Source: Magallana gigas | Taxonomy: Eukaryota | Assembly (NCBI RefSeq): GCF_963853765.1 | Contig: NC_088862.1 | Coordinates: forward strand, 19,344,001-19,408,000 | Reading direction: 5' to 3' | Length of the DNA stretch: 64,000 bases | Part shown: positions 31,085-63,892 of the stretch, piece by piece | Layout of the letters: every line of letters begins with the position of its first letter | Numbering within the stretch: position 1 is the first letter of the stretch | Position numbers and translations under genes: made by a program | Notes under the pieces: generated by a model | Told to the model about the DNA's origin: nothing | Databases searched by the model: none | The model's input: the letters and a program-made list of their open reading frames with translations, nothing else

Positions 31085-31088
31085 TTAA

Positions 31089-33393: not shown

Positions 33394-33723
33394 ATGTCTA
33401 CAACAGAAGGTTTTGAAATCATCCATTCCACTTCCGGTTTTGACAATGAGAGCCTTGCCTTGGACCCCTCTCCCTCTAATTATGTCCACGTTCCTATCAT
33501 CTGGACAATTCTGATCATAGTTGGCGCTGTGGGCAATGGATTGGTTCTTTACATTGTGTTTCGATATGGAGAGCGCTCAGTGACGAACATCTATATAACA
33601 AATCTAGCCCTGGCGGATTTAGCTTTTCTTCTAATTGTGGTGCCAATCACAGCTATCAGCTTCGCAATGCCAGCATGGGGATTCGGTGACGGAATGTGCA
33701 AGTTCTTTACATTCACTATATAC
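33394..33723 (+). CDS. KISS1R-like: Class A neuropeptide GPCR (KISS1R/GPR54-like), first coding exon 'A': N-terminus, TM1, TM2, ECL1, start of TM3
   Basis: 110 codons; N-glycosylation site NES; VGAVGN, TNIYITNLALADLAF, VVP, W.FGDGMCK motifs; ends FTIY|GTAAGT, phase 0. Confidence 0.93.
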
Positions 33724-34367
33724 GTAAGTTTTTATTGATATTTATTACAGAACTAGAGAGCTATCTTTGAACGTAGAGATTGTAACAATCTAATGTAACA
33801 ACTGGTACAGTTCCGTTTCCAAATTCTCATCATTTAATTCGAGATCCTAGTAAAACAATGCTCGCTTTCTCTCTAACCGTTATAAACCACTACAAAAAAG
33901 CCCCGCTTTAAAAATCTTTCTGTTAGTTTTGTGTGTGAGGCGATTACTCAAACTGTTTTTAACAAGACATTTTCAAAAGGATCTATTGCGAATACCAATA
34001 CACATTGCGAAAACCTATAGGGGAGATAATTTCCCAGAATATTTTTTTGTTATTTTCTATCGTACATCTTTACTTATAAATTAAGACATTTTGCAAATAA
34101 ACTCAAAATGCCTGCAACAGAGTAACTGCTTACACCTTTGGTATTCAAACATGTGTGAAATGATGTCCTTAAGCTATAATTGAATTTCAACTGATAAGTT
34201 ATAATTATTGTGAAATTAAAAACCTACTTTCATTGTCGATTAACAAGCCCGAAATAGCAAAAATGAAAGTAAGGTGGTGGACACGCTTTAGCGGATCAAA
34301 GTCTGGGGAAGTTTGCATCCAATTATACATTTGCAATAAAAGAAACTCTTCTAGATTGTCAAGACAG

Positions 34368-34890
34368 TTATGCCCCCTCCCCCTTTCAAAGAAGGAAGGC
34401 CATACTGTTTTGCTGTTGTTGGTCGGTACATCATCAGTTTCCGTTCATTCTTTTCGCAGAGGCTGCATCTACCGAAATGAAATTTGGTATACAGATTTAT
34501 CTTATGAATATCAAGATAAAGTTAGATTTTTTGTATGATCGACCAATTTTTGTCCATTGGACAAATATTTGCAGTTTTCTTTCATTTTCTTCGTCGAGGT
34601 TGCACCTGAAATAAAACTTTTGTATACAGATTTATCATATGAAAATCTAAATCAATTTTGAATTAATATACCGAATTATCATATGAAAATCTAGGTCAAG
34701 TTCGAATTTGGGTATAATCGAGCACTTTGTGTCAGATTTATGCTCCTTGGACGTCGAAAAATTCCAGTCATTTGCAGTTTCCGTTTCACAAAATCCTCTT
34801 GTTTGTAAAAGATACTGTAATGCTGATTTGATCAGTTTTAATTTGGCTATTGATGCTCAGGTAAGCGATGTGGCCCATGGGACTCCAGTT
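34368..34890 (+). mobile_element. HINE-like element with tandem units
   Basis: ttatgccccc..cttt..gaagga start, repeated aaatttggtatacagatttatc..atga units, 3' end caggtaagcgatgtggcccatgggactccagtt. Confidence 0.7.
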
Positions 34891-35994
34891 ATTAAATGAC
34901 CACTGAGTTTCAGTACATGTATTTAAATGTCACTATCCTGGAGCAATTCTTAGTGGAGCCCTACTCATTTATTCAGTTTTCTAGTATGTTTATATTCAAC
35001 GTTTAATCAATAAAATCTATTGGTAAGAACTTTTGGGACTGATGTCAGATTTATTATTAGCTGATGATATATATATTGATTTAAATGTCTTAATCAATTT
35101 CATTCTTGTTATATCTAATGATGTCATTCGGTAAAGTATCATTCACCAATCGTGTATTACAATATACCTCCCATTGCTTCAGTTACCAGTTCCATCCGGA
35201 TTGTTCACACAATCGCTTTTTAACAAAGTCTCTTACACGAATAAAAAATCTGCGTACAATGTATTAAGTTGTACAATCTTATTCAACATGGTTAAAAAAT
35301 ATAGCCAAGAATTAATGTAAAAAATTAACTTGAGAATGATTTCAATTTTGTTGTAATTCATGAGCAAATCATTAACATATGGGTCCTAAGCGTATTCATG
35401 TTTTGATAAAGAAGGAAATGGGGTGTATATAATGTTGACAAGAAATATCTTCGACTTGAATGCTATGTGTTACTTGATATGTACATGTATTTACTGCTTT
35501 ATTAGCTACAAATCTTAGTTGCGAGGGAAAATATGTTGCGTGCCAGAGTTTTCTTTTCTAATTCAGATAAAACATAACAATGTTCTTCAAACCAAATTGT
35601 GGCTTTGTTACCCGGGTCTTTGTTCACCATAATCAATGGTTGTCGAGATTACAATAGTTACGATAGAAGATAAAAGCAAAAGCTATCTGGTATCTGGATT
35701 TATTGTAATATACGTATTCAGGTACTTTTTGTGAATTTGAAGGTTTGTTGCTCCGAAAATTTCAGACATTCAAGAAAAATAAGAAAATTTGAATATCAAT
35801 TATATGTTAACAGCTTACCAAAACTATATCACATCTTGTTTATACATGTAGCATTGATAATTTGCAGAAATACTGACATTGGTGTTGTATTTTACTTCCT
35901 TATCTGGTTGTCTTTACTGAAGCTCGTATCACATCACCATTTACAACGATGTAGTAGGCAGTGAACACTTTCATTAGTTTGAGACAGCAAAATA

Positions 35995-36458
35995 AACAAG
36001 ATATCCGTGAGCCAATGCTCACTAGTAAATACCCCCGCTCTGATGTGAATATGCAAAATAAGCAAAGTCTTTATTTCACAGGAAGTTGATGTCCTATTGG
36101 TACAAAAACATACCAGACACTATGGCATGGCTATACAAATAGTGAATTAATTAAAATTTCAAGCATCTGCGACAAATAGTTGTTGAAAAATCTTTGACGA
36201 AAATTTGTTTGATAATTTAGGCTAAAAATAAACAAAGTCGTCATCCAACATGAAATTGAGGTCCGATTGGTACAAAAATATACCCCACGATATGACATGC
36301 TAAAACAAATAGTGTGTTAAAATTTCAAGCATCTGCAATGAATAATTGCTGAGAAAAATGCGGCAGAAATGTTTGTTACGAACAGCCATACAGAAGGACG
36401 GACAGACTGACACAAGGGTAAAACAGTATACCCCCTTCTCCTTCGGAGCGGGGGTATA
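35995..36458 (-). mobile_element. HINE-like element with two ~170-bp units
   Basis: aacaag at the 3' end, duplicated gattggtacaaaaa...aaatttcaagcatctgc unit, ggacggacagac microsatellite, terminal hairpin tataccccc..cttcggag.gggggtata. Confidence 0.7.
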
Positions 36459-39400
36459 GAAAAATTCTAAACTGTACAAACTGGTCTGAGAGGAAACTGC
36501 CAACTTCTTTAATGGAAATATGACTAACATTAAAACAGAAATATCAGGGTATACACCATGAAAAATCGTTGGCGGGCGTTACGCGTTTCATCTTGATTGC
36601 TGATGAACAAAAGCTACCTCGGCCAGCGAACTGCTAAAAAAATCGACAATTTATGTAATTACCATGTAACAAACTATTTGCTGTTGACATTGATAGCAAC
36701 AACACTCAGAATCTGAATAAAAATGTAATATTTAACATCATTTAAAATTTACGATCTTTATTTTGCAACCTTTGATGTGATCAAGCATTTCCTCTGTTGT
36801 TTGAGCCGCTTTTGCGGAGGATGGAAAAAATCAATGGCTGAATAATTTTGAATTTACAGCTTTGACACAGAGTTATGTAAACAATCAGCCGACGCCATTC
36901 CTGTATACCGGTCCTTCCTCATTTTTTCTCTTTCATAAGATTAATTTGAAAATTATTGACGTAAGTTTGGACTTAATATCTTTTGATAACATCTATCGCC
37001 CTTTATCGCTTCACTTCAGCATACTTGTATCTCTTTCAAGTTAATAAAAAGTCCTTACATATATTTTTATAACATATAGTAGTATGCGGGAACAACATTT
37101 TGAGCGTCATTAAGTTGTATTCAATCCAGAACTGGTAGGCGAAAGATTGATTTTTTAAAAAAAATTGACATGTGATTCAAGATAAAACCGTTCTGTATAA
37201 TATGAGGACTTATCATCAAGTCTATTCAAAACACTATCGACAATCAGATCGTGTTTGGGCGAGAAATAAAAAGGATACTTAAAAAAGATTTGTTTATTTT
37301 GTTTCATTAGTTTTTTTTCATCAGTTCGCTGTGTGAACAAGCGCGTCCAAATTTGTACAACATGTAAAATAAAAACAAAATATTATTTTTATTCAAGACA
37401 ACACATCGAAAACAAATTAATTTGGTATGGGTCAGTTTACACTTAAAAAAACAAACAAACAAAGGTACATTAGAAGAATAGTTGATTTCGTTTATCACGA
37501 ATGTTTGATTCACTTAATTTAATGTGGAGCTGCAAAGAGAAATCAGTTCTATCTGACACGCCTTATTCCTCAAATTCCTCGATAAAAATATGAGATGTAG
37601 AAAAAGTTCCTTTATGGTTGATGAAAGCCCGTGCAAACCCTATGTTTAAATATCAAAAAAGGGTGATTCTACGGCTCTTTTTGACGAAGGAATTCTATAA
37701 TAAAGGAGAAGTGGGAAAGCAATGCAAAAAAAATCTTTATGAATATAAAAGTATAGCATACAACACTGTGCCGGATAATTATGCCGGTGCCATTGTGGTA
37801 TTTTTGCACCGCTTACGATGAAGTTTCGGAAAATTCCATATATACCTAATGATAGACCATTGTCCAGAGAATATATAACCACTTTTGTTTTTAGTGAGTT
37901 TTACCTGACAGGTGAGATAATTACCTTTTAAAAACAAATATCTGGTAGGAAAATGACAAGCTAGCTTTAAAATCTTGATGTAAATGTATACATGTATACA
38001 ATTAAAGGGAACTATATTATGAGATCTTAATTATCAACTCTAAAAAACATTGCTATGACAATCTACCCACATCTGCTCTTTTTAGTTCGCCAAATTTGTT
38101 GCATATTTTTTTCTTTTGAGGATTGATGTGACTAGGTCGATTACAAAGCCAATCTGATTTCCTGATTAGAACCAATGAGAAGTGTAAATATTTCAGCGAT
38201 AAATTGATTTTCCTTGTCTTGTAAAAATCCACTGTTCTCGAAGAGCTTCTAATTGAGTTTGCCGTGGTAGTAACATTTAAAATGAAGTTTATTTCTGATA
38301 ATACACAGGCCATACTCCTGTGCCGTGAATCCTTTCCAGAAAGACCTGTTAATACGATAGGGTTTCCCTCCATTTTTCCATTACAAGAGAACACAAAGAA
38401 AACAAATTAGTCGCTGCTTGAAATTACTGATAATCCTCTCCGTCAGAGGATATTAAAACCAATATCATCTTCGAGAATGCTCGTGTATCTCATTATTGAC
38501 TATTTCTCTCCCCCTTGTAACATAATTCGTGGATGTTGATCATTGCCTGAGTTTGCTTTGCTGTCGATTTGACATTTTCCTTAATTGTATTACCATGGTC
38601 TAAGTATTACCTCGACAAAATGGCCTAGTGAAACAGTCCAATGATGAGAGGGTACTTGTACATTTTTATCTGAATTATGAGTGGCGTTCTTTTATTTACT
38701 GGTGGTATTTGTGATAAAATTTTAAAAATCCGTTATTCAATTTTTGTGCCAGAGTCAAAAAGGCACTTTGCAGTTGCGTCGGCCGTATACCACAACATTC
38801 GAGTTGTATATTATGTTGTACACGTGGTGTATGTTTTTGAAGTGGCAAAAAGGAGGTTACGCGAAGATTTTTGGCTAGATTCTTAATTTATGGACTTATT
38901 TTGCCAGTCAGAATGTGCTTACGGAAGAAAGCATTTATTCATATTAAGATTTTATACACACCTTTGATTCCATCGTACACGTTTTAGTTTTCTCAAACAC
39001 CTCATCACATTCCCGCGATCAAATTTGACTGTGACGTATGTTTATGTTCAAATATCAAGACAAAGCTTAGGTTCATTACAATGTTTATATCATTTACAAA
39101 TATACGTCATCTGTACATGTTTGTGTTAACACATATTGTATTAGTTAATGAAATATAATGTACACAAAGTCATTGATGAAAAATTAATGTTATGCATGGA
39201 GTATTATAGTCAATTTGTTGTAACAGGGGTGAAAACACCTAAATAATTTAGAAACTTGATCGACTCTCAGAGTTTTCTATAGTCTTTCACGACCTAAAAT
39301 CATTGATGTATATTACATGTATATATATATAGCAATGATGTTACTTTGAAAAAAATATGTATTTTTAATTAGCATACACTAAACAGAAAAATAGATGTAT

Positions 39401-39594
39401 GTGCACATAGTACCATTATAAGCTTATGAGAAAAAAATGTTGAGATTACAATTTACAGTGGTCTTCTTTCCTGGGTATATTTTAACTTGTCAACAACTTT
39501 GAGAAAGATAGTCATTAGATTACATCCAAACTCAATAATCAACAAAAGAAGCAAAGTAAAAAACAACTGAGGACCAAAAACAATCAAGAAGTAA

Positions 39595-39909
39595 CATAGG
39601 CGTCGGAACTGGGGGGGGGGGGGCTTTTTGCAAAAGTAGACCTTACCATTAGGCACATATCATCATAAAGGGTTCAGCCCCCCCCCCCCCCCAACTTTTT
39701 CTCGCAGGAAATATAATTGTTCCCAAATTTACCTTCGAAGAGTAAAATATTGAGAAGTTGGAGTCATGGGGCCCCCTCCCCCGGGCCCCCCCCCCCCCCC
39801 CGATTAGGATTTTCATGATTTTGGGAATTAGGTTTTTTTTTCAATATTTCTGAGGATTAGACTAGCCCCCCCCCCCCCCCCCACTTTCAATTTGCTTCCG
39901 ACGCCAGTG
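39595..39909. mobile_element. MITE with 5-bp TSD (hAT5-like, tentative)
   Basis: TIRs cataggcgtcggaa / ttccgacgccagtg; TSD AGTAA (39590-39594, 39910-39914); poly-G and poly-C tracts. Confidence 0.8.
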
Positions 39910-40563
39910 AGTAAGAGAGGAACTATATATTCCAGACCCTGATAGTCATGGACATGAGACGAACGCACTTTTTACGTGACGCTTGCAAAAAATATAAAAA
40001 GTAGAACAGTATATGGCTTTATAGTTTTAAATAAGCTTACTTCATAATTATGTTAACCAGGAGGTCCTCTACTAAAATTGTAAATTTCATGTCCCCTGGA
40101 TTATGGGTTTTTTCTCTAAGAGGGGCCAAAAATGGATGTATAGTGTTAATGCTAATAATGTTTTAAAACCATCTTCTCTTCTCCCACACATCTGTAAAGA
40201 AAACTGAATTCATAATTATAAATTCCATGTTTTCCCATAGAAGAGTACCCCTTTTCTGGATGGTAATTTTCCTCCTGATATCGTTGTCGTATCGGTCGAA
40301 AATTTAGTTAGTTCAAAACACAGTTCAAAATTAAACAGTTAGTTTTCCTGCAGTAATCAAGCGTCGTTTCATGTCCTTGTATCCATGTTCAAGGTATCCA
40401 CCCCCCCCCCCCACCCTTAAAAAAATCCAACACTTTCAGAAAAATATTTGGTGCCATAGATTGATTTCATGTTTAAAATATGTTTTACTATTTGAATTAA
40501 GAAATGGTTTCGTTTCATGTTAAAGCCCTTAACTTTGTCCGACCGCGAATAAATATATATAGG

Positions 40564-40656
40564 ATCTCTCATGATTTGCGTATTTTCTATCCCCGAGCCT
40601 TGGCGAGGGGATAGAAAACACACAACTAGTTGGTACCATCCCAAATCATGAGAGAT
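40564..40656. mobile_element. Palindromic mini-element with nested stems
   Basis: atctctcatgatttg (40564-40578) / caaatcatgagagat (40642-40656); inner ttttctatcccc / ggggatagaaaa around gagccttggcga. Confidence 0.7.
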
Positions 40657-41027: not shown

Positions 41028-41239
41028 NNNNNNNNNNNNNNNNNNNNNNNNNNNNNNNNNNNNNNNNNNNNNNNNNNNNNNNNNNNNNNNNNNNNNNNNN
41101 NNNNNNNNNNNNNNNNNNNNNNNNNNNNNNNNNNNNNNNNNNNNNNNNNNNNNNNNNNNNNNNNNNNNNNNNNNNNNNNNNNNNNNNNNNNNNNNNNNNN
41201 NNNNNNNNNNNNNNNNNNNNNNNNNNNNNNNNNNNNNNN
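41028..41239. other. Assembly gap (N run) between the two GPCR first exons
   Basis: 212 consecutive N. Confidence 1.
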
Positions 41240-42495
41240 TTAAAACACATAATAATAACCCTCGATGAAACCTCTCTTTCAATGAATGGACCAGAACCAC
41301 CCGTTTAATCAGACAGGGAACCATTTCCTGTAACTAAATGAGACAAAGCAGAGATTTCTTTGATAAGGAAGCAATCAATCCAGTTTATTGCCCTGCCCTT
41401 TTATGAAAAATGAAACTATGCATGAAAAGCGATACTGTAAATTCATGCACGTTTAATTTATGTACTATTATCAAACTTCAAACCCCCGAGACAGAAGAAC
41501 ACCGATCTATTCGACGCTATTTAACCTTTATTACAAGACATCGATTACGTTAATGACTTCTAATGTAGAATGATTCTAATATAATATCGTTCATTTAATT
41601 CATACAATGGAATTGTGGGGTGTATGAAATAGATGCGTCCCGCCATAGTTATGACATGATCGATTATTGAATCTTAGAGTTGTAGGATCTGCCATTATGA
41701 AATTTAAAAACTTCAGTTTTTTTAGACAATGATACCTGGACATACCAATATCTCGTAAGAATCCTGCTTGACAAACAACTGATCGATTGAAATTGATATT
41801 AGATTTATGAGAAAAAAGCTTAATCTCGCACTTATATACTTTTGTTCTTTTTGGAGTATAAAAGCAAGGTTACAAAAATTACATTCAAATCACTCAAAAA
41901 AAAATTTAATGTACCGAAAACTGTTTTGAATTCTGTAAACGATAAAAGATAAAAAACAGGTTACCTATATTTATAGAAAACTGTATACTTTTTTATATAC
42001 AGAGATAAAATCGGTTTAAACTTGCCTTGGGTTTAGGCCATTCCAAGTTTTTACCTATGTTTAACGTCTGCGGACAGATTGGTTTCGAGATGTGAAAATA
42101 AAAAAACCCACACACACACAATGCTTGTTCATAAATTAGATCGCTTTTTCATATGTCGGGCTCGGGATTGCATTTTTAAATCGGGATCGGAAATCAAAAA
42201 TTAATTATAACAACTTTTGATGGAAACGATAATGGTTATTTCTTGTGTTTGTATTTTTGTTACAAGATGAAGAAATTACTTCAAAATGTAATATGTTTTA
42301 CGGTGCTACCGTTTTGGCGAGCGCAGCAAGAATTACACATACCTTGCATCAACTTATTGTCATAAGTTGTCAACTTATAGTTTTATTTAGGTATCAATGA
42401 ACGTCAAAGAATTTTTGAGAGAGTATTGCTCTACAATAAGTATGCCAAAGGTACTAATTTTAATGGTTATGATACATACAGCGCAACCTCCTACC

Positions 42496-42497
<2 letters not shown>

Positions 42498-42559
<62 letters not shown>
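42498..42559. repeat. (GA)n microsatellite
   Basis: About 31 GA units. Confidence 0.98.
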
Positions 42560-42565
<6 letters not shown>

Positions 42566-44468
42566 CCTGTTTGTAGGTGTGTAATTTCCCACTTTTAAAT
42601 TTAATAGTCTGACTATATGCAATATCTACATAATTGTTTTTACCTGTTTATTGTTTCATTTTATTCCTTTTTATTTAGTTCAAAATGTCCTATTGTTTAT
42701 TTCCTCCCTACTCATATACTTACCTGCCTACTGTATACATGCATGCACAATTAGCTTAAAAATGGATCGATATGACAGTAAAGTATGCCTCTTGCTAGTA
42801 TATATATCAATTTCAATTCAATTTAAATTTAAAATCTCTATATTAAAAAAAGATTAAAAACAAATCATATGTTAATGAGACAGGTATCGCAGTCTATACT
42901 GCAATAGCCAGTACACTCATTACAGATGTTTGATCCACCTCTAAATTTATCGCGGGAAATATAGCGCGAGTGCATTGTGACGTCATCCATGATTTTGTTC
43001 GTCTTTGTTTACGTTTCTCGACTCAATACGAAGGTATGGAAGCATGTAACAAATCTTTTGAGTCTCGCCAAAGTATATGCGGTACTCAAAACGTGTCTTC
43101 AAACTTTAAGTCACCGTAAATTACGAGTTACAAGTCAGCCATTAATGGTAACACGTATATATAAGAAAATCAGTGAAAAATGAAAGTTGAATCAGGGGTA
43201 CTAAGGCCAAACAAATTTTCTTCCAGCCCTGGGCGGCGCCATATTGGCAGCCATTTTGTTTTTTAAAAGTTAGTTCGATAACTGATTGACTGGTACATAT
43301 CAATGTTTATTGGAGCTAAACTCAATTAAAATTTTCCAATGTTTCAATAGAAGGTAATTTGAATTAAAAGAAATAAAAGAGGACACCAGATAAGTTTCAA
43401 TAGTTTCAAGAAACACGACTAGTTCTATGTATGTCTTATCAAATTATCAGATGGAAAATAAAAACATTAATATCAAGGAACTGATCTTTTAGATACTGAA
43501 TAAAGTATTCAATTTTATTACCGCAGCATTTATATGAATTAAATTGATAAACAATGAAAGAAGAAATAAAAAAGTTCGGAATAACGTAACTCGATCTTCG
43601 GCTATTTCCGAAGACAAAACGTGTACGTTTTACGTCTGTAACATGACGTCATAATGTTGACTGAGCACGCGACGTTTGGTTTAACTTTGGCTGATGATTT
43701 GAGTAGGCAACCAGGCGGATCCTACTGTGTACGTTTCAAATAAATTTAGTTCTATAAAAATCAAACTCCACTGTGTTAAATCTGCGCTCGGTCCAACGGT
43801 CACATCGTTTACATATTATTAGATTTAAATTATGAAATTCATGACCCTCGGGTAGGGTTTCAGAAGCTTGGGTGGAGCCGATAAAACCAGATATAACTTT
43901 TTATCCTACTCAATTTGTGCTTTCAGTATAAGGGAGTAAACAAATGCATTGTTATTGTGTTTATCATGTCCTCGTCTGAATTGTCAAATTCACATAAAAC
44001 TGCTTTTTTGGGGGAGGGGGGCCACATAGTGAACATATTTTATAGGTCACTTGAGGCGGTCGAGTAACTTATTGCTGTTGGGAGCTAAAAAAGCGGGGTT
44101 ATAGTTCGAGGAGTCTTGGATTATGGTTTAATAATGAATTAATAAGAAGACTCTATAATGAAGCTTAAAATGCAAACATGAGACTCCTATAACAAATTTC
44201 AGGCAAAGATTCCAGTTGATGTGGCACTTTAAGATAAATCCAAGATGGCAGCGATGTGTACCTTGTGTGTAATTAAGTTTGGTTATATATTTTTACTAAT
44301 GAGAAAAATATATAACAATTCTGAGTTTCGTATTCGCCGCATTTTGGGGGAAAAAAACCACAAGTGGTATCTACTTATTTTGTGCCTTCATGCGGAAGGT
44401 GAAAGCTCTTATAATTAGCGTTCGAATTTTTCACACCTTATTTCAAAGAAAACGAAAATTGTCTAGCT

Positions 44469-45031: not shown

Positions 45032-46249
45032 TTTATAAACATTATTATGATATTGTAGTAGTTATAATAATATTGAAAGCTAACGAAAATATCTACTGCG
45101 GAAATTGCGTACATGTACATGTACTAGTTTATTCATCACTTTCTTTGTAATTTGTAAATCTAGCTTACTGTATACCAACGTTGATTGAAAACAATGTTAT
45201 TGACAATAATCCTTCCAACTACGACCAGCTATTGGTAGCTTAAAGCTGCGTGCATGGAATATTGTGCATTATAAACCTTATTCAAAGAAATCGTTATTTC
45301 AGTCGAAAGTGTTATGTTTAGCAATTGTGAGGCTCTCATTCACTTTACACTGACCAGAAATTTTCTGATAAAAATCTATTTCGTCGGCACATAAAACTTG
45401 TTTCAATTTTCAATGCGACGGAATTGAAATTAATTTGTAACATGGGAGGTTTATTTTCTTTGGCTTGTTCGTTCCAGGCAGCATTTGCATTTCAATTCAT
45501 CATTACAGAGAATTTGGTTTTCTGCTCTTGTCTAATGTAAGGACATTTTAGTGGAATACTGACAGTATACTTCTTATCTTCAGCCATTAACTCAACGAAT
45601 ACGCCGAAATCAAAGCATATTGTTCCGAGTCCGCGTATTATCTCAATATCTTAACCTCGATTAAGCACTATATGTTTTTCACAAAAGGTGATCAATCTGA
45701 TTTTGTGAACTTTTACATGTAAATGAAAATTAAACCAGCATAAAGGAACAAAACGCAACGCACAACGAGATGTCTCTTTGATTACTTGAAGGTTACCCAA
45801 TTTCAATATTAATTTTGAAAAATCTGTATGAATTTTTTAACCGGACAATAGATCAGATCTTTGACGTCACGATGATGACCGCGCCATATGGTTTGACAGC
45901 TACATTAGTATACACACTAACACACGGTTATATTTACAAGTTTAAATCTGACTTTCTCAAATGAAAATATAAGGAAAAAATCCAAAAATGCACACTGAAA
46001 TATGAACGTAGTTGGTACGGGATCGAATCTTCTAAGAAGTTCACAGGATTTGATCACGTGATCAAGCAATTCTTTAAGAACTTTTAACTTGCTATTTGTT
46101 TTTTAAATAAAACTCTTAAAAAGTAAGCTTTTGATTATGAAGTTGAAATGAGTAAAATTCCTGAAAAGGTCACAAGTATTTCGAAGAGAAGGTCACCTTT
46201 AAAAAAATTGCTGATGCGATTGCGATATAACGAGAAAAAAAGATTCTCA

Positions 46250-47160
46250 TCATTCAGATAGGTCGAGTTCTTTGGTTACAGTAGCTAAGTCATAAGTAAA
46301 AATCGAGAAGAGGGTGGGTGATCTTCTTGTCGAACACCAGTAGCACAGTTGACCAATTTGTAAGGTAGCCACGATAGATATACATGATTCTGTGTCAGTA
46401 TAAAGACTGGCTATAGTGTTGTACATATATCCATCTATACCACTAAGCTGAAGTTTGTATCGAAGGAGGTTGCGGTCCACAAAGTGTACAAATGTAGATG
46501 TACAGTTCTGAATTAAACTATTTAATGTAAATCATGATCTACATACATATATGACCTATCCTCTCTGAAGCCATTCTGTATATCCACTATGACGTTGTTT
46601 TCCTCTAGAAAAAATGTATTCTGTTATTTAGTACACAACTGGCCACCATAAACAATAGGCCAATTCCTCTATAGTTTAATGGTATTCTTGGATCTAACTG
46701 CTGTGTCCTTGGGAATGGGGTAAATAAGTGCTTTCCTCAACGGTTGTGGTACTTTTCCTGTTTGAAACCACAACTGAAATAATTTCTGTTGTACGGTTAT
46801 GGTTTCATAGTTCTTGCTGTCTTCATATTAATACATCTGGTCAAACCCAGGTGCCTTTCCTTCTTTTGAATTTAATACGACAGGAGCAACTTCCTCCCTA
46901 GTAATAATCTTGTTAGGTAATCTATTTGGTATGTATGAGGATCAACTTTCTCCCTAGTAATAATCTTGTTAAGTAATCTGTTTGGTATGTATAGGGACAT
47001 CGTCATGTTATCTTCAAGAGATTGTTTATGTTGTACATGTAAGCATTCATTATAGAAGTCTTATTCAAAGTTCGTGTTCGCTTTTTTCAGTTCCTCCCAG
47101 AATTTTCGTGGATCACTAGTTGAGACATTTTCAATGTTGAGTGCAAGATCCTTTTTGAAC
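46250..47160 (-). mobile_element. Degenerate non-LTR retrotransposon RT fragment (CR1/L2-like)
   Basis: DPRKFWEELKK; ITREEVAPVVLNSKEGKAPGFD; LFQLWFQTGKVPQ..RKALIYPIPK; EENNVIVDIQNGFREDRS; DRNLLRYKLQLSGIDG...SPTLFSIFTYDL, with stops and frameshifts. Confidence 0.88.
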
Positions 47161-49030: not shown

Positions 49031-49929
49031 GGCCAATCCGTTACCAAACTGACTCGTACCCAAACAGACTTGTATCCAAATTGTCGATTAAAAATATCAA
49101 TTATAATATCATGCCTGCCTTCAAAGAGTGAGAAGAATTTATAAATTCGTCAATCTAATTAATCGGATTTTTTTTTAAAGAAAGATTGCATGTAAACAGA
49201 AATTTACTATCAAATGTTGATATAGGGACCTCTTTGGCAAACTTATTGAAATGGCATGATTATATTATCAAAAATTCTACATTCATTTATCTCATTTCTT
49301 AATTATTGTAATTATATCAAAACCTAACCTTAACAGATTATCTTTTACATTTACAACCCAAGGATCATTGTTTACCACCGGACCAATGAATTATTAGTCG
49401 GTTTGAGTACGAGTTGGTTTGGGTACGACTTCACTTGTCGTACCCAAAAAGAGAAAGCTTGCAATGCACACTTGAGACTCCTTTACAGCCCTACGTACCA
49501 TGATCCTTACTGCTACTCAGGTGACTCTCAAGGCTTTGGGCCTCATGTTTAAAATTTACTCAATAATTGTGCACTTTTCATTTCATAAATTTGATCTTTA
49601 AAGATTTCAATGAAAATACCTCAGAATTATTTTTTTTCAAATTCGATCTACTGAAGACAAAATTTAGTAACGTACCTAAATATGACTTCATAATGTAGAC
49701 TGAGATTGTGACCTTAATCGTGTTAACGTTTGCATTCTGACTAACATAGTAGGAAGGCCAGATTGTGCATGATTTAAACAAGTGAACTGTTTCCGTAACG
49801 CTAATCATTGCCTACAATAACATGTTACACCGTTTACATATTAAATTATATTAGAAAACTGTAAAGAACACTAGGCGAGAGACATTCAATGTGCTTGTTT
49901 AAGAATCGAATCATTGTTAGGGCGGCCTA

Positions 49930-52800: not shown

Positions 52801-54037
52801 AACCAGACCTTTTTCGCCCACTTGCATCGGTGGTTGACCGATAAAAAGGTGACAAACTGAGATAAATGCAAACTGTCATTCCGCTCGGATCTATTTACAT
52901 TGAATTGATCTGAACACTGTATCAAATTATTAATTCCCCCACCAAATGACTATATACAGGAGCGCGCTGATTGACACTCTCAGTAATGCCGCCTTGTTAT
53001 GTGACAAACTATGCTGTAATTTGCCAGTGAATTTAGCTGGAAATAATTGTAAGCATCTTTGAATTAAAATCTTATCTCCTCGTGGCTGAGATTGTAGAAG
53101 TTCTAGGCGCCACAGGAAATCAAGCATCGATGCAGGAATATTTACTCTAACTACAGAGAACAAAATCAATGTGATTATTTATCGTTAAACAGGCCAAATT
53201 AATGTCATTAAATGCGTTTTGTGATGATACAAGTCACATCCTATACTCAGTGATTCCTTTATTCCATGACTGCCTTGGTGTATTTCTCGACAACAGGCGT
53301 TTTTATTGTGGTTTTACATTGGAGATTTTATTCACGGATTTTCGGGCTCCCTTGAGATTTATTTTGGTAAAGTATGGAAAGAACAAAATCTTAAAATATG
53401 CAAATTGAATGATTGATCCACTTGTGTGTATAACTTTGAATGACTAAGCTGTCAAGATGCTGCAAAAATAGTCTCAAATTGTTTAGGAATAGACATTCGT
53501 AAAATGTGCAGGAATTTGAAGAAAATTCTGAAAAAATAAGGTAATTGCACCTCGGGACATACATGTATAGCGCAATGCATCAATCATTACATTATGCCGG
53601 AGAGAACACCGCACGGAAAGCAACATTGATTAACGAATGCGTGCTGTATTGAGCTTCACTTGGAAAGAAAAATAAATCAAAAAAAAAAAAGAAATTGAGG
53701 AACGAGGTGTCATTATATTTCATTGGTTACTTAAAGCTGCAGTCTTAAAAGAGACACGGACAGAGATTGAATTGACATGTGTCTTAACTGTGGTTGCATA
53801 GAAAAGAATATATAAGACTTGTGTGTTACTTAAGGTATGGGTGCATTGGATCTTTGTTATCAACTTCAGTTGTTTTTCGAATTCTTGTTCTACAGTCAAG
53901 TCAAAACCGCGTGACGACACCTACGTTAAATAAGTACATCTTGCTTGTGAAGTAGCCAATTTCGAGACCCGAAGCCGTGGTTTACTTTAATACCTAGTAC
54001 TAAAACAGTGAAAGAAAACGAGACACAATAGTTCGTC

Positions 54038-54319
54038 ATGAATAACTCAACTCAGGTCATGGGCGACCAAATACAGCCTTTACCAATACTATTTACTTGG
54101 TCACTGTTGACCTTTGTGGGGTTGGTTGGAAACAGCGTTGTGATCTACATCACGTGCTTACACGCCGGCAAGTCCGCCACTAACACCTACATCCTAAACC
54201 TGGCCGTGTCAGACATTGCCTACCTGATCGTTGTCGTTCCTTTCACCTGCCTGGCATTCATTTTCAATCACTGGGTATTTGCTGAATTTGGGTGTAAATT
54301 GTTCATCTTTACACAGTAT
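54038..54319 (+). CDS. KISS1R-like: Class A neuropeptide GPCR (KISS1R/GPR54-like), first coding exon 'B': N-terminus, TM1, TM2, ECL1, start of TM3
   Basis: 94 codons; N-glycosylation sites NNS/NST; VGLVGNSVVIY, TNTYILNLAVSDIAY, VVPFT, W.F...GCK motifs; ends FTQY|GTAAGT, phase 0. Confidence 0.93.
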
Positions 54320-55860: not shown

Positions 55861-56016
55861 ATTTAAGAAATAAACAACGTTATTTAGGGAACATGGCGTA
55901 ATGCTCTGTTGGCATATTCCATGATGCGCTCTAGCGCATCATGGAAAATATGCCAGCAGAGCAGTTGCTATTCATAACGCCATGCACACTAAATAATCGT
56001 TGTTTATTACTTATAT
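55861..56016. mobile_element. Palindromic mini-element
   Basis: Termini atttaagaaataaacaacg / cgttgtttattacttatat; inner stems gctctgttggcatatt / aatatgccagcagagc and ttccatgatgcgc-tcta-gcgcatcatggaa. Confidence 0.75.
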
Positions 56017-57630: not shown

Positions 57631-57739
57631 TGTTGGTTATGTGCAGATGTCAGATGGGCGTGGTCATAATGACACAAAGAAGCGTTGCTCCCGAGTGTCG
57701 TTATGACCACGCCCATCGGGTATCTGCACATAATCAACA
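57631..57739 (+). other. Long hairpin (~45-bp stem, 19-nt loop): palindromic mini-element or pri-miRNA-like structure
   Basis: tgttggttatgtgcagatgtcagatgggcgtggtcataatgacac / gtgtcgttatgaccacgcccatcgggtatctgcacataatcaaca. Confidence 0.7.
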
Positions 57740-60084
57740 ATATTACATGTATATGTGGTAAGTTACTTGTACCATAGTTTACGATTATTCATTATATCTT
57801 ATTATTCAATGATATTACAGGTTTACTTTATCGACTTTGAGTTTTAGCAAATGTCATTTTTCTAAATCTACATTAAGACACACAATGAATTTTAAAGGAA
57901 AACATAAATGGTTATGTCCTTTTTATTTCAATGTAAAATTTTAAAGCTAGTCTTGTGTAATGTTTGTGCTTTGTTTCTAAATATTAAAATCAAATGAATT
58001 ACTTTTTAAACATAATAGTCTTCAAATTCATTTGAGTAAACGATAGAAATGAATTTTATTAGAAGAAATATTTATGGACAAATTACAGATGGATTTGGAA
58101 AATACCAAGGCATGATGAATATGCATTGCCAATTTATAGTGGTATTGTTTGCAGTGTGGCAACACCAATACTTATTACTTGTAAAGATTTTTTGAAAGGG
58201 AAAATCCCAGGTGGTTTGATTTACATAAATCAGTTAGGACCTGTGAACAGTTTGGAGGATTTTGTTTTCTCTCTATTTAAAAGTGTTAGGAGTAGACCTT
58301 TGGGATCTTATTTTATTCCTAGGCAGAGTATTGAATGTGCATATTCATGATTCATACAGATTGTAAGTCAATTTATCCATAAAAACGTGTGGCATGCATG
58401 CAATCGGGTTATAAGAAAGTGTGCCTCAACTGTGAACTGAAAATGCAAATGTGCTTGATGAACCTTTGGACGACAATTAATATATAACAATAAGAAAACC
58501 AATGATTAAGATTAAAATTAAGAAAGAAATTGTTAGAGAATATGTCTGGGAAACATATTGATTTTTTTTATTCCATAGTTTTTGTTTACTATAGTTGAAT
58601 ATATAATTAGATTTTAGAGTTCCTGGTTATTTTATTACATGTAGTTCAAGGATAGTTAGACGAATGTACTACATGTATGAAAGCGCTTGGTAATGGTCTT
58701 AAACTTTGATATTTCCATTTTACTTTTTTTAAATAGTTTTTGGTAGTATCAAGTTTACATTTATTGGTATACTCTATCGGCCGTATGTATATGAATAAGT
58801 TAGGCATTATTTTTTTATAATATAACTTTCTCTTTTGAGACTCTCATTTATTCATTTTGTTAAATTGCTATAATACTAATCACAGTTACATTAAACACTA
58901 AGCAAAATATCTTTTGTTAAGTGTATTGATCGATATTAAAATACAAGAACTAATAGAACAAGAAATATGTTTACAAAAAAAAGATCGATTTTCGCCACTG
59001 CTTTCGCCTTCATTTGTCAAAATGTTGAGAATTTTCAACATGGCATCTTCTTCAACCCCGACCAAGATGGAGAGAATAGTGTTTGTGCCAGTGGTTTATG
59101 GCGATGAAAAGACATCTACAAGGTGAACACACTGTTAATTGATTATAGAATCGTCAGCCAAGTAACAGCTGTTTGTACGACGACAGTTTCCTTTAATTAT
59201 TGAATAGCTCTGCAGCGGAATATTGTAAGCCTATGTTAGAGATTAGTCAATTTGCTTGTGAATTCCATCTCTGCGTACCGTCGTTAGGGCCTGCGTATGA
59301 GATTTGATTGCCTCCCGTTGTGTTTAAATTTCGATCTATAACAATTTGTTTCTGCAGTATTATATAATGTTTAACAGAGATCAATATTAACTTTGTTCTA
59401 TAAATCGTTCATTTCCTGTTATACAGATTAGGCATACTATTTGAAGGTTAAGTTAACGAAACTCAAATGATTAGATGCGATCTCGTTGTTAACAACGACT
59501 AGGTATACTTTACGGTTTCAAACGGATAAGATACAATCCTGAAAAAATATTTACACTTTATAAAGCCAAATTTCCAAACAAAATTTTATTATAAATGATT
59601 CAACTGCAATTGTCAGCCATTGTTTTTCAAAATAGTTCTCCCTTTCTAAATATGCAAGATCAAAGTATTGTAGGAGAACACCTTCCTTTAAACGCGTTAT
59701 TAAGTAACACCCAAATTTCTGTAATTATGAATCAAATTATCAGGAAAAATCAATTTTAAGACCTCCATGTTTCTGCAATGCATCGTCTGATTTTAAAACC
59801 GATTTCACATGTTAAAGTAAACATCAATGTTAAAGTTTTAACGATACGATAAACAACACATAGAAAAGGCTGCTTTTTAACATCATACCTAATTAGATCT
59901 AAGATGACCAACTGACCAATCTTATTATCCTATGCCTCAACTTATTAAAAGATAACAAAATTGTAAAACGAGCAATAAATTTTCATAACAATTTAAAGGT
60001 TATTGTGACCTTTATATAAGGTTATGAAAATACGAGGATGTCTATTTACTGTAGCAATCATTGGATTGGATTTCTTGAAAATAA

Positions 60085-60611
60085 ATTTTAAGTCACCTCT
60101 TTTTGAAAACTACAAGACCACTCATTACCATTTTTGATTTGAAGCATCTCTAGGATAAGAGGAATATAAATTGTAAAATTTATGACTATACCACCAAAGG
60201 GGTCTCTTTGGCGGGGTCAAATAAGCTAAATTGGGTCCAAGTTTCAAGAATCTCCTTTTATATTCCCACACATGTGGGCATAAAACTAAACCCATGGTAA
60301 TGATGTCATTGAAGCCCTCAACAAAATTGTGACATTCATTACACCTTGATAAGGGGTTCAGAACGATATGGTTCCTGGGTTCAGGGGTTTATTGTCCTTG
60401 TGTATGGCCAATATGACCACCTATTAAAAATTTATTGAATTTTATAATATTTTCTTCGGTACTTCTATACTTTCACAGTCGTGGGAGATAAACTAAATGT
60501 ATTAACATTATGTACTTAAATTGAGCTCACAATGAAAAATGAGACCCTCTGACAAGTCAATCTTAGGGCTATGGTACTCAGGTGACCGTTAAGGCCTGCT
60601 GGTCTCTTGTT
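60085..60611 (+). mobile_element. HINE-like element with satellite-type monomers
   Basis: 3' end caggtgaccgttaaggcctgctggtctcttgtt; internal aaaattgtga.attcat..cc..ggggttcag monomer motifs. Confidence 0.65.
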
Positions 60612-61715
60612 CAAAATTTTTATATATTTCTATGTTAAACTTTGAGCCTCTTTTGGATTCCAGTGTCAGTCCGGGGTCACGGTTTTTACGATTTACAATC
60701 TACACTATTTTAAGATGCTTAAATATTTATCTCACAGGTTGTAATGTAGCATTATTATAGTGCTTGAAAAGAATATTTTTGAATATTTCCCTACATATTT
60801 TTCTGTTAAATTTTGAACCCTTTTTGGATACTAAATATTAGTCCGGGGTCTTGATTTTAACAGTTTAGAAAGAACACTATCTTAGGATGCTTGCAAAGTA
60901 ATAACACAAATTGTAGCATTATAGATCTTGAGAAGAAGATGTTTAAACATATTTCTTATATATTTCTATATTTAACTTTGAACCCCTCTTTAGACCCTAG
61001 TAATGGTCCACTAGTCACGGTTTAACAAGATAAAATCTTCACTATATATACAAGCTTTTACGTAAATATTGGTATTTCTGATGCAACGTTTATTGAGAAG
61101 AAGATTTTGAAACATTTTACCTATATATTTAATGTCTGATTTTTAACCCCTCTTTAGTCCCAATTATTGGTCCTAGGGTCACTGTTATAACAATTTAAAA
61201 TCTGTACTACTTGAGGGTGTTTGCATAGTAATATCACACATTGAAGCTTTGTAGCTCTTGAAAGAAATTGTTAAACGTATTCCCTATATCCCTAGAATTA
61301 GATCGGGGAGGGGGTATCAGTTTTAAAATTTTAGAATCTTCCCTACAACAACAAGATCTAATGTAAATAATGGCATGTTTAGCGGAATAGTTATTGAGAT
61401 GAAATTTTTTAAAACATTTTAGCTATATATTTCAGTGTTAAACTTTGATCCTTTCTTTTGGCCCTAACATTGGTCTAGGGGTCAAGGTCTTCAGCAATTT
61501 GAAATATATACTATTTGAGGGTGTTCGCGTAATAATATCACACATTGTAGTTCTTACGAAAAATATTCTAAACATTTTCCCTATATATTTCTATGTTAAA
61601 CTTTTGTAAATATTATTCTTGGTGAAGTGGGTCTTGGGAAGATTTTTATACATTTTCTCTTTACATTTCTCTATTAAACTTTGAACCCCTCTTGGAGCCC
61701 TAAATATTGGTCCGG
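60612..61715. repeat. Degenerate ~165-bp satellite-like tandem array, about 7 units
   Basis: Recurrent ctatatattt...ttaaactttgaacccctctt...tattggtcc..gggtca...tttaacaa.tt..aa.ct.cacta...gagga.gctt units. Confidence 0.75.
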
Positions 61716-62045
61716 CATAAAGGGTACGCAAACACAACAATACATACTAGAACTTTTCAAATGTAACCATTGTTTATGATGTAGAAATGTCAGAAAGTAT
61801 AAACGTAAACGATTTAAGGTGGAATGGGGCACCTGTCGATATTAATATGGATAAAATGATATAATAATCAAAATAAATTTTTCAACAACAATTTAACAAT
61901 ATTTGACTAAAATATGTTTAAAAAATTTTTGGAAAAGTAAAATCTATATAAGTCCCAGCGGAATTCAACATCTTAGACTCAAAAATATGACAGTCAATAA
62001 AAATCTGTGTTAAACAAGATGTAATTATAATCGGGGCGATTATAG

Positions 62046-62840
62046 AGTCTCCCAAACGAACGAGGCCATCATTGGGAGTTGCGTCAAACTTTAAAGACAA
62101 AAAGATTTGATTATTTTTATTTCTGAAGTTTCATGATGTTCCCCAGGACCCAAGGAACAAGAATAAATATATAATATATAAGGGGTGGGGATCTTAACCG
62201 TTTTCAATATATTTGGGCACTTCCTGTTTGAGGGGAGTCAGGACCACCTCCGGGGCCAATGACCTACATACCATTTGATGTCCCTTGACACAAGGAACAA
62301 GAATATATATGGTTAAGGGGTGGGGATTTCAACCGTTTTCAAGTTATTTGTGCACTTCCTGTTTGAGGGGGTCAGGACCACTCCCGGGGCCCATTACCTA
62401 CATACCATGTGATTCCCCTTAACACAAGGAACAAGAATATATATGGTTTAGGGGTGGGGATTTCAACCGTTTTCAAATTATTTGTGCACTTCCTGTTTGA
62501 GGGGGTCAGGACCACCCCCGGGGCCCATTACCTACATACCATGTGATTCCCCTTAACACAAGGAACAAGAATATAGATGGTTTAGGGGTCAGAATTGTAA
62601 CAGTTTCTGAGATATATGGTCATTTCCAATTCCTGGGGGTGGGGATGACCCCAGGGGTCAGATCTAATAAACCCTATATATTGCCTGTAACAGTCAATAT
62701 ATGATGCTGAAAACCCTATATTATTACCTTTGCCCATTTTTAAGTTATAACAATTTACGCTTGAGTTTACAATTTTTCCATAAGGTTCAATGTTAGACCC
62801 ACGACCTTTTGACCCCCCAGAAAACTTCGTTTGGGAGACT
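62046..62840. mobile_element. HINE-like element bounded by a 15-bp inverted repeat and carrying a 134-bp tandem array
   Basis: agtctcccaaacgaa (62046-62060) / ttcgtttgggagact (62826-62840); caaggaacaagaat starts at 62151, 62291, 62425 and 62559 (periods 140, 134, 134). Confidence 0.8.
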
Positions 62841-63756
62841 TAATTATCGAAACCGGTTTATTATAATTGAAAATGCTAATAAATCATTTTCTAACAAATG
62901 AATAGAAAATTCACTATCTTTCAAAGTGTTTCAGGACGAATCCATTGAGCCATGCGACTTCATTTTCTTTTAAAAATGATTGGAAAATCATATTTTGTCA
63001 TCTCTCCATCTTTTTCAAGCCGCATATTCTATTTACTAAATATGCAATCAACACATTTCAAATTCATGGGAAGAAGATCAAAGAGACGTCAAAATCGTTG
63101 AAAAACAGCTTTATATAAGTAGGATTTTGGATCGATTGTGTTGTGTTGAGACCCATATTATGGTAAAACCAAATGGATTTAGAAAATTGTTTTTACTAAT
63201 TCACATGTCCAAACCAGATAACGATTGTAATTCAAAAATTGCACAAATAATAGATGAAATTTTCACTATTCACGTGCACCCATATTCCCGTCGAATTACT
63301 AGTAACATCTTTTGGGCCCATTTTCATAAAGAAAATCCAAGCTTTTAATGTGTTATGAAGAAAGATTTTATTTCACAAAGCTATTAAAAGGATATTTAAG
63401 ATATATCCCTACCATAACATAAATATTAGAGAAATATATTCTTTGGGAGAATATGTAGAAAGCATGTTTTGAAAAAGAAATGTAGAAGCCTAACAAACAA
63501 ATTTTAGTTGTTGGCATAACCCTATTCCTTATATGAATAATAGTTTTAAAAGTTTAATTTAGCATTGAAATATTTTAATTTGAAGGAAAGCTTTTTCAAG
63601 TAAGTGATGGATTTGATTTGCAAAATTTAAGTACACGTATGTTTATTATGACGTTTGAAAATCAGAATACGCCTTTCACAATTATTTCTATCGCAACCCC
63701 TGTGGGTCATACATGTTTTCAATGTGGCTCTTAGATATGTTTCTCTTCCTTACTAG

Positions 63757-63892
63757 GTTACGGTCCATGCCACCTGCCTGACATTGATGGCTATGACGAT
63801 AGACAGGTACCAGGCAATCGTGTATCCCATCCAGTCCATGAACTGGAGGAACACCAGGGCATCGACTTTTGTTTGTCTTGGCGTCTGGAGTG
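63757..63892 (+). CDS. KISS1R-like: KISS1R-like GPCR second coding exon (TM3-DRY-ICL2-TM4); the gene continues beyond the window
   Basis: Acceptor tttctcttccttactag|; 136 nt; VTVHATCLTLMAMTIDRYQAIVYPIQSMNWRNTRASTFVCLGVWS-G|GTAAGG; phase 0 in, phase 1 out; closely resembles KISS1R VSVQATCATLTAMSVDR. Confidence 0.93.

What the first reader, a model, noticed from the sequence alone, without database searches (positions are those of the whole stretch)
33394..63892. Two intact, diverged first coding exons and only one downstream exon: candidate 'variable-exon' neuropeptide GPCR locus
Seen: exon A (33394-33723) and exon B (54038-54319) each encode N-terminus to TM3. They align without gaps at about 34/77 identity over TM1-TM3, keep all class A motifs (GN, NLAxxD, WxF, CK), have no stops, and end on the same codon with a phase-0 GTAAGT donor. 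The only exon that can accept them (DRY exon, 63757-63892) lies downstream of both. I found no DRY, TM5, TM6 or NPxxY exon in the 20 kb between A and B, which is mostly transposon debris. Inference: A and B may be alternative first exons, each with its own leader, spliced onto shared 3' exons, as in clustered protocadherins or UGT1A. That would give receptors with different N-terminus/TM1-3 and identical TM3b-TM7 and C-terminus. An unused exon this diverged would be expected to have decayed, so A looks maintained. I do not know of this architecture being described for a peptide GPCR.
Basis: partly seen in the sequence, partly recalled or inferred. Interest (0 to 1): 0.88.

Follow-up and report, generated by a model that had tools for sequence, protein, structure and literature searches.

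The report
Oyster kisspeptin-type receptor, two alternative fronts
One oyster neuropeptide-receptor gene makes two receptors that differ in their first third (N-terminus to mid-TM3) and share the rest, by starting transcription at two promoters; this is real, expressed and conserved in oysters, already sits in automatic RefSeq annotation, and I found no paper on it.

Summary
Exon A (33394-33723) and exon B (54038-54319) are intact, 45% identical N-terminus-to-TM3 modules with identical phase-0 GTAAGT donors. Only one set of downstream exons exists: the DRY exon at 63757-63892, plus two exons just past the window end.

The interpretation also holds.
- A spliced RNA contig joins a non-coding leader (ending at 24682) to exon A and then to the DRY exon.
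- Another contig joins exon B, with its own contiguous 268-nt leader, to the same DRY, TM4-5 and TM6-7 exons.
- The gap-free Saccostrea cucullata locus has the same layout, and RefSeq lists A-type (X1) and B-type (X2) isoforms there and in C. virginica.
- Both exons are under strong purifying selection. pN/pS is about 0.1-0.2 with synonymous sites saturated.
- There are 24 fixed type-specific differences, including pocket position 3.32.

Scallop and pearl oyster have a single exon 1, so B is an oyster innovation. The assembly gap at 41028-41239 is intronic and does not affect the result.

The gene is a kisspeptin-type receptor by the conserved intron test. The locus has two variable exons, not a protocadherin-like array. 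It is a new variant of a known kind and of moderate interest. Different ligand selectivity of the two forms is inferred, not shown.

The parts
24653..24682 (+). 3' end of the non-coding leader exon of the A transcript, with a GTATGT donor at 24683. The 5' end is not determined; the contigs carry 202-238 nt of leader.
   Evidence: The last 30 nt of the 238-nt loose end before 33380 in RNA contig X1 match here at 28/30, uniquely in the window. The sequence and donor were read.
33380..33723 (+). Exon A: AG acceptor at 33378-33379, 14 nt of 5' UTR with an in-frame TAA, then CDS 33394-33723 (N-terminus, TM1, ICL1, TM2, ECL1, TM3 up to position 3.33). Phase-0 GTAAGT donor.
   Evidence: Contigs of 3 runs from different studies start exactly at 33380 and end at the donor. 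Ortholog comparison gives pN 0.128, pS 0.731.
41028..41239 (.). Assembly gap (N) inside the A-B intron. It was not filled.
   Evidence: No exon is adjacent to it. The orthologous S. cucullata interval has no gap and no GPCR exon.
53015..53240 (+). Conserved non-coding block 0.8-1.0 kb upstream of exon B's ATG. It is a candidate B-specific promoter or enhancer, or a further leader (inferred).
   Evidence: It is the only syntenic non-exonic block in the locus that aligns with S. cucullata (75% over 236 nt, at the same distance from B), although synonymous sites are saturated.
53770..54319 (+). Exon B as a true first exon: at least 268 nt of contiguous leader, an in-frame TAG at 54029, then CDS 54038-54319 (N-terminus to TM3 position 3.33). 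Phase-0 GTAAGT donor. No usable acceptor lies upstream (purine-rich).
   Evidence: Contig L008 is colinear with 53770-54319 and then jumps to 63757. RNA-type runs of 6 studies hold 0.93-0.96 of its words. pN 0.099 versus Saccostrea.
63757..63892 (+). Shared exon 2 (TM3 from position 3.34, DRY, ICL2, start of TM4), phase-1 donor. The shared exons 3 (L002:1423-1652, TM4-ECL2-TM5) and 4 (L002:4301-4726 CDS, TM6-TM7-H8-tail, 3' UTR to about L002:5724) lie beyond the window end.
   Evidence: It is 100% identical at protein level to the C. virginica and S. cucullata exon.

Best explanation
This is one kisspeptin-type (GPR54-like) class A neuropeptide receptor gene with two transcription units that share exons 2-4. 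Promoter 1 lies upstream of 24682 and gives leader, exon A, DRY exon, exon 3, exon 4. That product should be 371 aa in this species (computed); its orthologs are 371-372 aa. Promoter 2 lies inside the 30-kb intron, just upstream of exon B, and gives exon B, DRY exon, exon 3, exon 4 (357 aa). Exon B has a donor but no usable acceptor, so transcripts from promoter 1 splice over it. The ancient phase-0 intron in TM3 makes either module fit the same acceptor. The products share TM3b-TM7, ICL2/3, helix 8 and the tail, which is the G-protein and arrestin side. They differ in the N-terminus, TM1, ICL1, TM2, ECL1 and the top of TM3, which form part of the peptide pocket. Shown: the exon anatomy, both junctions in RNA, conservation of the layout in Saccostrea, purifying selection on both modules, and absence of B in pearl oyster and scallop. 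Inferred: exon B arose by duplication of exon 1 in the oyster lineage; promoter choice sets where each form is made; and the two forms differ in ligand affinity or selectivity rather than in coupling.
For: Junctions:
- A to DRY: the loose end of contig X1 matches 63759-63786 at 27/28. The X2 contig also runs 20 nt past the donor.
- Leader to A.
- B to DRY to exon 3 to exon 4.

Single constant set.

Ortholog locus: S. cucullata L009 has no N run and has A at 10001, B at 30806, DRY at 45918, exon 3 at 46620 and exon 4 at 49376.

RefSeq: the X1 and X2 proteins are identical from VTVHATC onward in C. virginica and S. cucullata.

Selection:
- A: pN 0.128, pS 0.731.
- B: pN 0.099, pS 0.894.
- Constant exons: pN 0.061, pS 0.80.

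Divergence between modules: 24 positions are invariant within 7 A and within 3 B sequences but differ between the types. These include 2.60, 2.64 and 3.32 (I in A, Q in B as in human KISS1R).

Origin: there is one exon 1 in Pinctada (L010) and one in Mizuhopecten (L012). A and B forming one clade is not rejected (AU p 0.49).

Folding: both isoforms fold as complete 7TM plus H8 with equal confidence (pTM 0.79 and 0.77).
Against: The A junction in this species rests on short overhangs of assembled contigs, 28 nt and 20 nt. I found no full-length A transcript or A-type protein of this species in the collections. Contigs cannot give expression levels, so A or B could be a minor form. Neither transcription start is mapped; B's leader may extend further or include the conserved block at 53015-53240. 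Functional difference between the forms is untested, and the ligand of lophotrochozoan kisspeptin-type receptors is unknown (PMC9400282). The exon-1 tree places B on a long branch near the base, so an older origin of B is not excluded.
Confidence: 0.86

Rival explanations
1. A and B are ordinary tandem paralogs. Exon A has its own DRY/TM4-7 exons, hidden in the assembly gap at 41028-41239 or elsewhere.
For: The gap content is unknown. A weak TM7-like motif (SY.N....PF.Y) sits in an open frame at 36826-36909 downstream of A (E 0.07).
Against: RNA joins A directly to the DRY exon at 63757. The gap-free S. cucullata interval between A and B holds no GPCR exon. Genome-wide there is no spare DRY exon. 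RefSeq X1 in two other oysters uses the shared exons. No TM6 motif lies upstream of the TM7-like frame in any frame, and that frame is not conserved in Saccostrea.
Confidence: 0.02
2. One of the two exons is an unused relic or yields only non-productive transcripts, so the gene makes a single receptor.
For: No full-length A cDNA of this species was retrieved. Contig data give no expression level.
Against: Both exons are intact in at least three oyster species (A in S. echinata too) while synonymous sites are saturated, with pN/pS of 0.11-0.18. Both are found spliced in RNA contigs, and their words are held by RNA-type runs of several studies, some runs holding both (X3, X5, X6). Start codons, donors and class A motifs are all kept.
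Confidence: 0.03
3. Both isoforms are made but are pharmacologically equivalent. The duplication only supplies a second promoter for another tissue or stage, and the sequence differences have no effect on ligand choice.
For: B has its own leader and a conserved upstream block. Alternative promoters mostly serve regulation. The disulfide Cys, N1.50 and D2.50 are kept in both.
Against: A second promoter does not need a second coding module. The modules are only 45% identical, yet each is 82-88% conserved between species. There are 24 fixed differences, several at positions that line the pocket in class A receptors (2.60, 2.64, 3.29, 3.32, ECL1). This is a mapping by numbering, not a test.
Confidence: 0.3

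Closest known systems
Kisspeptin-type receptors (KISS1R/GPR54 family), bilaterian clade 2 of Escudero Castelan et al. 2022 (PMC9400282)
   Same: The best solved relative is human KISS1R (8xgo, E 3e-58; GALR2 gives 4e-47). It has the family's two diagnostic introns, in TM3 at phase 0 and in TM4 at phase 1 (PMC9400282 section 6). RefSeq names its orthologs kiSS-1 receptor-like or GPR54.
   Different: That paper's account of the gene structure mentions no second, alternative exon 1. The ligand in molluscs is unknown.
Insect ecdysis-triggering-hormone receptor subtypes ETHR-A and ETHR-B (PMC8291126, PMC8175484)
   Same: One neuropeptide GPCR gene gives two receptor subtypes by alternative exons that encode transmembrane helices. 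The arrangement is conserved across a large clade, and the subtypes are used in different cells.
   Different: I recall that in ETHR the alternative exons are at the 3' end, with the shared part at the 5' end and the choice made by splicing; I did not check this in the papers. Here the alternative part is the 5' third and the choice is made by promoter use.
Variable-first-exon loci: clustered protocadherins and UGT1A (from my own knowledge, not tested here)
   Same: A variable exon with its own promoter and a donor but no acceptor is spliced to common constant exons. The variable part is the recognition side and the constant part is the signalling or catalytic side.
   Different: There are only two variable exons, not an array of 9-50. 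Exon A is preceded by a separate leader exon. There is no evidence of stochastic choice. The boundary runs through the middle of a helix bundle, so both modules must pack against one shared TM3b-TM7.
Alternative-promoter GPCR isoforms such as OPRM1 exon 1 versus exon 11 (from my own knowledge)
   Same: Two promoters and two 5' exons feed the same downstream exons.
   Different: The OPRM1 exon-11 forms lack TM1 (6TM variants). Here both forms are complete 7TM receptors with homologous but diverged TM1-TM3.

Membership tests
Class A (rhodopsin-like) GPCR | 7tm_1 profile match and the N1.50, D2.50, C3.25, DRY, CWxP and NPxxY motifs | tested here: met
   Pfam PF00001 is hit by exons A, B and the DRY exon. 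GN, LAxxD and CK are in both modules. DRY, CWLP and NPFVY are in the shared exons. AF2 gives 7 helices plus H8 for both isoforms.
Kisspeptin-type receptor (KISS1R/GPR54) | Closer to KISS1R than to the galanin, allatostatin-A or somatostatin receptors | tested here: met
   phmmer against PDB chains gives KISS1R 201 bits, GALR2 164, GALR1 156, SSTR2 148. I did not build a full family tree with all outgroups.
Kisspeptin-type receptor (KISS1R/GPR54) | Two conserved introns: in TM3 at phase 0 and in TM4 at phase 1 (PMC9400282) | tested here: met
   Intron 1 follows position 3.33 on a complete codon. Exon 2 is 136 nt, so intron 2 is phase 1 and falls in TM4 (GVWS|VS). The same positions hold in S. 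cucullata.
Kisspeptin-type receptor (KISS1R/GPR54) | Activated by a kisspeptin-type peptide | not testable with these tools
   Ligands of lophotrochozoan members are not identified (PMC9400282, section 12).
Clustered variable-first-exon locus (protocadherin/UGT1A type) | A tandem array of many variable exons | tested here: not met
   There are exactly two exon-1-type sequences in 123 kb here and in 60 kb of S. cucullata.
Clustered variable-first-exon locus (protocadherin/UGT1A type) | Each variable exon has its own promoter and leader and only a donor site | tested here: inconclusive
   B: the leader is contiguous with the genome for at least 268 nt and there is no acceptor. A has an acceptor and a separate leader exon 8.7 kb upstream. 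Transcription starts are not mapped.
Clustered variable-first-exon locus (protocadherin/UGT1A type) | All variable exons splice to one set of constant exons | tested here: met
ETHR-A/B-type receptor subtypes by alternative TM-coding exons | Alternative exons at the 3' end chosen by splicing | tested here: not met
   Here the alternative exons are at the 5' end and are tied to separate leaders. It works in a similar way but is not a member.

The most novel reading that the evidence does not exclude
The two N-terminus-to-TM3a modules give one signalling core two different ligand specificities, for example for different peptides of a still unidentified molluscan kisspeptin-like precursor. Promoter choice would then set which peptide a cell responds to. 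The B-plus-constant unit later budded off as free-standing, fast-evolving receptor genes in Ostrea and Saccostrea. That would show module-level GPCR evolution: exon duplication, then an internal promoter, then a new gene.
Probability: 0.35. Interest if true: 0.7.

Novelty: new variant of a known kind. Interest (0 to 1): 0.5.

Why it matters
This is a clean natural case in which the ligand-facing third of a peptide GPCR has been duplicated and swapped while the coupling part is kept. Both versions have been preserved since before Crassostrea and Saccostrea diverged, which is long enough for synonymous sites to saturate. It offers a ready-made chimera pair for asking which part of a kisspeptin-type receptor sets ligand selectivity. 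It also gives two receptor forms to include when molluscan kisspeptin-type receptors are deorphanised; a screen using only one RefSeq isoform would miss the other. The short B-type paralogs of Ostrea and Saccostrea suggest how an internal promoter plus shared exons can seed a new gene. For annotation, the old UniProt model K1R8Z6 (B exon without the DRY exon) is wrong.

Tried and rejected
- The representative search with exon A returned predicted proteins with 4-11 repeated N-terminus-to-TM3 stretches (P0002, P0003, P0004, P0006, P0024). Their sequences are unrelated receptor types of unknown origin, partly exact internal repeats, so I did not use them as support.
- I looked for an A-type full-length protein of this species. 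Only genomic read-through ORFs (exon A plus intron) turned up. The C. gigas 'isoform X1' implied by the name 'isoform X2' could not be retrieved.
- The look-up of encoding contigs had no record for P0162, P0155 or P0156. No C. virginica or Mytilus locus could therefore be examined.
- The TM7-like frame at 36826-36909 (E 0.07) is single-copy in the genome. It has no TM6 or CWxP partner in any frame and is not conserved in Saccostrea. I treat it as chance.
- Read laying cannot span 30 kb within the 6,000-letter limit, so the A junction was read from loose ends rather than from a joint table.
- The bacterial promoter scan is not meaningful for an animal gene.
- The AF2 models only show that both forms are foldable. 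No coordinates were available to compare the interface or the pocket.
- Literature searches and the scan's own notes gave no description of this architecture.
- dS could not be estimated for B or for the constant exons because synonymous sites are saturated. Only pN/pS is reported.
Full report
**Observation**

The window is G000:C10:19344001-19408000. Exon A (33394-33723, 110 aa) and exon B (54038-54319, 94 aa) are open. Both match Pfam 7tm_1 from profile position 1 to 65/66 and are 36/80 identical, E 2e-23.

Both end on a full codon before GTAAGT. Each ATG has an in-frame stop 9 nt upstream. The DRY exon is 63757-63892.

I extended the window by 59 kb. tblastn with the window's own exons and with full-length relatives was run over the 123 kb, together with per-exon HMMs using all heuristics off. 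These found:
- two exon-1-type sequences;
- one DRY exon;
- one TM4-5 exon at extended coordinate 64423-64652 (L002:1423-1652);
- one TM6-7 exon at 67301-67726 (L002:4301-4726).

Genome-wide, the only other close exon 1 and DRY exon belong to a paralog 3.3 Mb away, which has its own 27-kb first intron.

**The assembly gap**

N 41028-41239 lies in the A-B intron, far from any exon. I did not fill it or look its letters up. Three independent results make it irrelevant to the question:
- RNA joins A to 63757 (below).
- The orthologous S. cucullata interval has no gap and no GPCR exon.
- The genome has no spare DRY exon.

**Transcripts**

For B, the Logan contig L008 (2344 nt) is colinear with 53770-54319. 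It then continues at 63757-63892, 64423-64652 and 67301-68724. B is therefore a true first exon with at least 268 nt of its own leader. The sequence before its ATG is purine-rich, without a credible acceptor, and the same is true in Saccostrea.

For A, RNA-type runs of six studies hold about 0.55 of the words of 33300-33800, which is what the exon alone would give. I laid four of these runs on 29000-34500.
- Contigs of three runs cover 33380-33723 exactly.
- The X1 contig (612 nt) carries 238 nt before 33380. Its last 30 nt match 24653-24682 at 28/30, where a GTATGT donor follows.
- The same contig carries 28 nt after the donor that match 63759-63786 at 27/28, uniquely in the window. The one difference is a synonymous GTT/GTC.
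- The X2 contig carries 202 nt of leader and 20 nt past the donor.

Removal of an 8.7-kb and a 30-kb intron shows that these are spliced RNA, whatever the library label says. The A transcript is thus leader (ending at 24682), exon A (33380-33723), then the DRY exon. Several runs hold both A and B (X3, X5, X6). Contigs give no expression levels.

**Other oysters**

RefSeq lists kiSS-1 receptor-like isoform X1 (A-type, 372 and 371 aa) and X2 (B-type, 356 and 355 aa) in C. virginica and S. cucullata. The two isoforms are identical from VTVHATC onward. S. echinata has the A form. The B form is 'GPR54 isoform X2' in C. gigas and C. angulata, so the window is one of these or very near.

The S. cucullata locus (L009) is gap-free and has the same order and similar spacing: A 10001-10330, B 30806-31087, DRY 45918-46053, exon 3 46620-46849, exon 4 49376-49795.

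Outside the exons, only one syntenic block aligns between the two species. It is 53015-53240 against 29689-29920, 75% identical, and lies 0.8-1.0 kb upstream of B in both. This is a candidate B promoter or enhancer.

**Selection**

Nei-Gojobori counts, window versus S. cucullata:

| Region | pN | pS |
|---|---|---|
| Exon A | 0.128 | 0.731 |
| Exon B | 0.099 | 0.894 |
| Constant exons | 0.061 | 0.80 |

For A the corrected dN/dS is about 0.05. For B and the constant exons synonymous sites are saturated. Both modules are therefore under strong purifying selection.

Among 84 aligned positions from TM1 to the exon end, 29 are identical in all 7 A and 3 B sequences. Another 24 are invariant within each type but differ between the types. 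These include 1.51, 2.49, 2.60, 2.64, four ECL1 positions, 3.27 and 3.32, which is I in A and Q in B. Human KISS1R has Q at the position aligned with B's Q. That these positions face the ligand is general class A knowledge and was not tested here.

**Family**

The nearest solved structures are human KISS1R (E 3e-58), then the galanin receptors. Escudero Castelan et al. (PMC9400282, section 6) report that kisspeptin-type receptor genes share an intron in TM3 at phase 0 and an intron in TM4 at phase 1, and that galanin and allatostatin-A receptor genes do not. Both introns are present here with those phases. The duplicated module ends exactly at the ancient phase-0 intron, which explains why either copy fits the shared acceptor.

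**Origin**

Pinctada (L010) has one exon 1, A-like, 9 kb upstream of its DRY exon with nothing B-like between them. Mizuhopecten (L012, 100 kb) also has one.

All non-oyster orthologs are closer to A (46-54% identity) than to B (31-36%). A groups with them in the exon-1 tree.

B sits on a long branch. A tree with A and B as one clade is as good as the free tree (AU p 0.49). The most economical reading is that exon 1 duplicated in the oyster stem and B then diverged quickly. An older origin, or a tandem gene duplication followed by loss of the upstream copy's 3' exons, is not excluded.

Short receptor genes of about 300 aa in Ostrea and Saccostrea (P0200, P0204, P0230, P0260) have a B-like first exon (98/99 support). 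Their remaining exons nest inside the oyster constant-exon clade, excluding Pinctada (98/100). The Ostrea one is a free-standing gene (L011), and the window genome has no copy. They look like duplicates of the B-plus-constant unit, which fits with that unit being transcriptionally autonomous.

**Mechanism and what is not shown**

The splicing logic and both products are shown. AF2 predicts a complete 7TM bundle plus helix 8 for both forms with equal confidence, which is weak support. Three things are inference: different ligand selectivity of the two forms, different sites of expression, and the position of either transcription start.

**Novelty**

Six literature searches found no description of alternative TM1-3 modules in a kisspeptin-type or other peptide receptor. 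The gene-structure section I read in PMC9400282 covers C. gigas but mentions no second exon 1.

The isoforms do exist in automatic RefSeq annotation. Receptor subtypes made by alternative TM-coding exons are known, for example ETHR-A/B (PMC8291126).

Noticed in passing
window 53015-53240: This is a conserved non-coding block, 75% identical over 236 nt to S. cucullata L009:29689-29920. It lies at the same distance upstream of exon B in both species, while the rest of the introns do not align. It may be a B promoter or enhancer, or a further leader exon.
   Followed up: partly
window 36826-36909 (+), inside open frame 36805-37041: This is a single-copy open frame with a TM7-like motif (..SYVNNQPTPFLYT against the family's SYANSCVNPFVYA), HMM E 0.07, 3 kb downstream of exon A on the gene's strand. 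No TM6 partner was found and it is not conserved in Saccostrea. It is probably chance. If real, it would be a relic of a lost 3' exon set of A.
   Followed up: partly
L011:10001-23447 (Ostrea edulis); P0200, P0204, P0230, P0260: Short receptor genes (218-301 aa) in Ostrea and Saccostrea have a B-like first exon. Those with exon 1 (P0200, P0204, P0230) have lost C3.25 and the ECL1 Trp. They sit on long branches in the trees. No ortholog exists in the window genome. S. cucullata 'isoforms' X3 and X4 differ throughout, so that RefSeq gene probably merges tandem copies.
   Followed up: partly
G000:C10:22688113-22720946 (-): This is the closest paralog in the genome, with exon 1 54% identical to A and a DRY exon 60% identical. 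It has the same exon plan, a 27-kb first intron and only one exon-1 copy. It corresponds to the 'galanin receptor 2a-like' P0165/P0163 group.
   Followed up: no
L010:9625-9992 (Pinctada imbricata): Just upstream of the DRY exon there are two or three partial tandem copies of its first roughly 20 codons (HMM E 2e-7 and 8e-6).
   Followed up: no
window 3236-3427: A second assembly gap (N run) lies upstream of the gene.
   Followed up: no
window 42290-43820; also 30100-31500: The introns contain dispersed repeat families. Window 42290-43144 and 43142-43820 have dozens of 84-98% copies on all chromosomes. Many short, deep RNA-run contigs pile up on 30100-31500.
   Followed up: partly
P0185 (UniProt K1R8Z6, Magallana gigas 'KiSS-1 receptor', 296 aa): This old gene model joins exon B directly to exon 3 and skips the DRY exon, so it lacks TM3b and the DRY motif. 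It is a mis-prediction of this gene.
   Followed up: yes
P0002, P0003, P0004, P0006, P0024 (representative search): These are predicted proteins of 618-948 aa, of unknown origin, with 4-11 tandem N-terminus-to-TM3 (or TM2) stretches of other class A receptors. They may be read-through of duplicated 5' exons or assembly artefacts.
   Followed up: no
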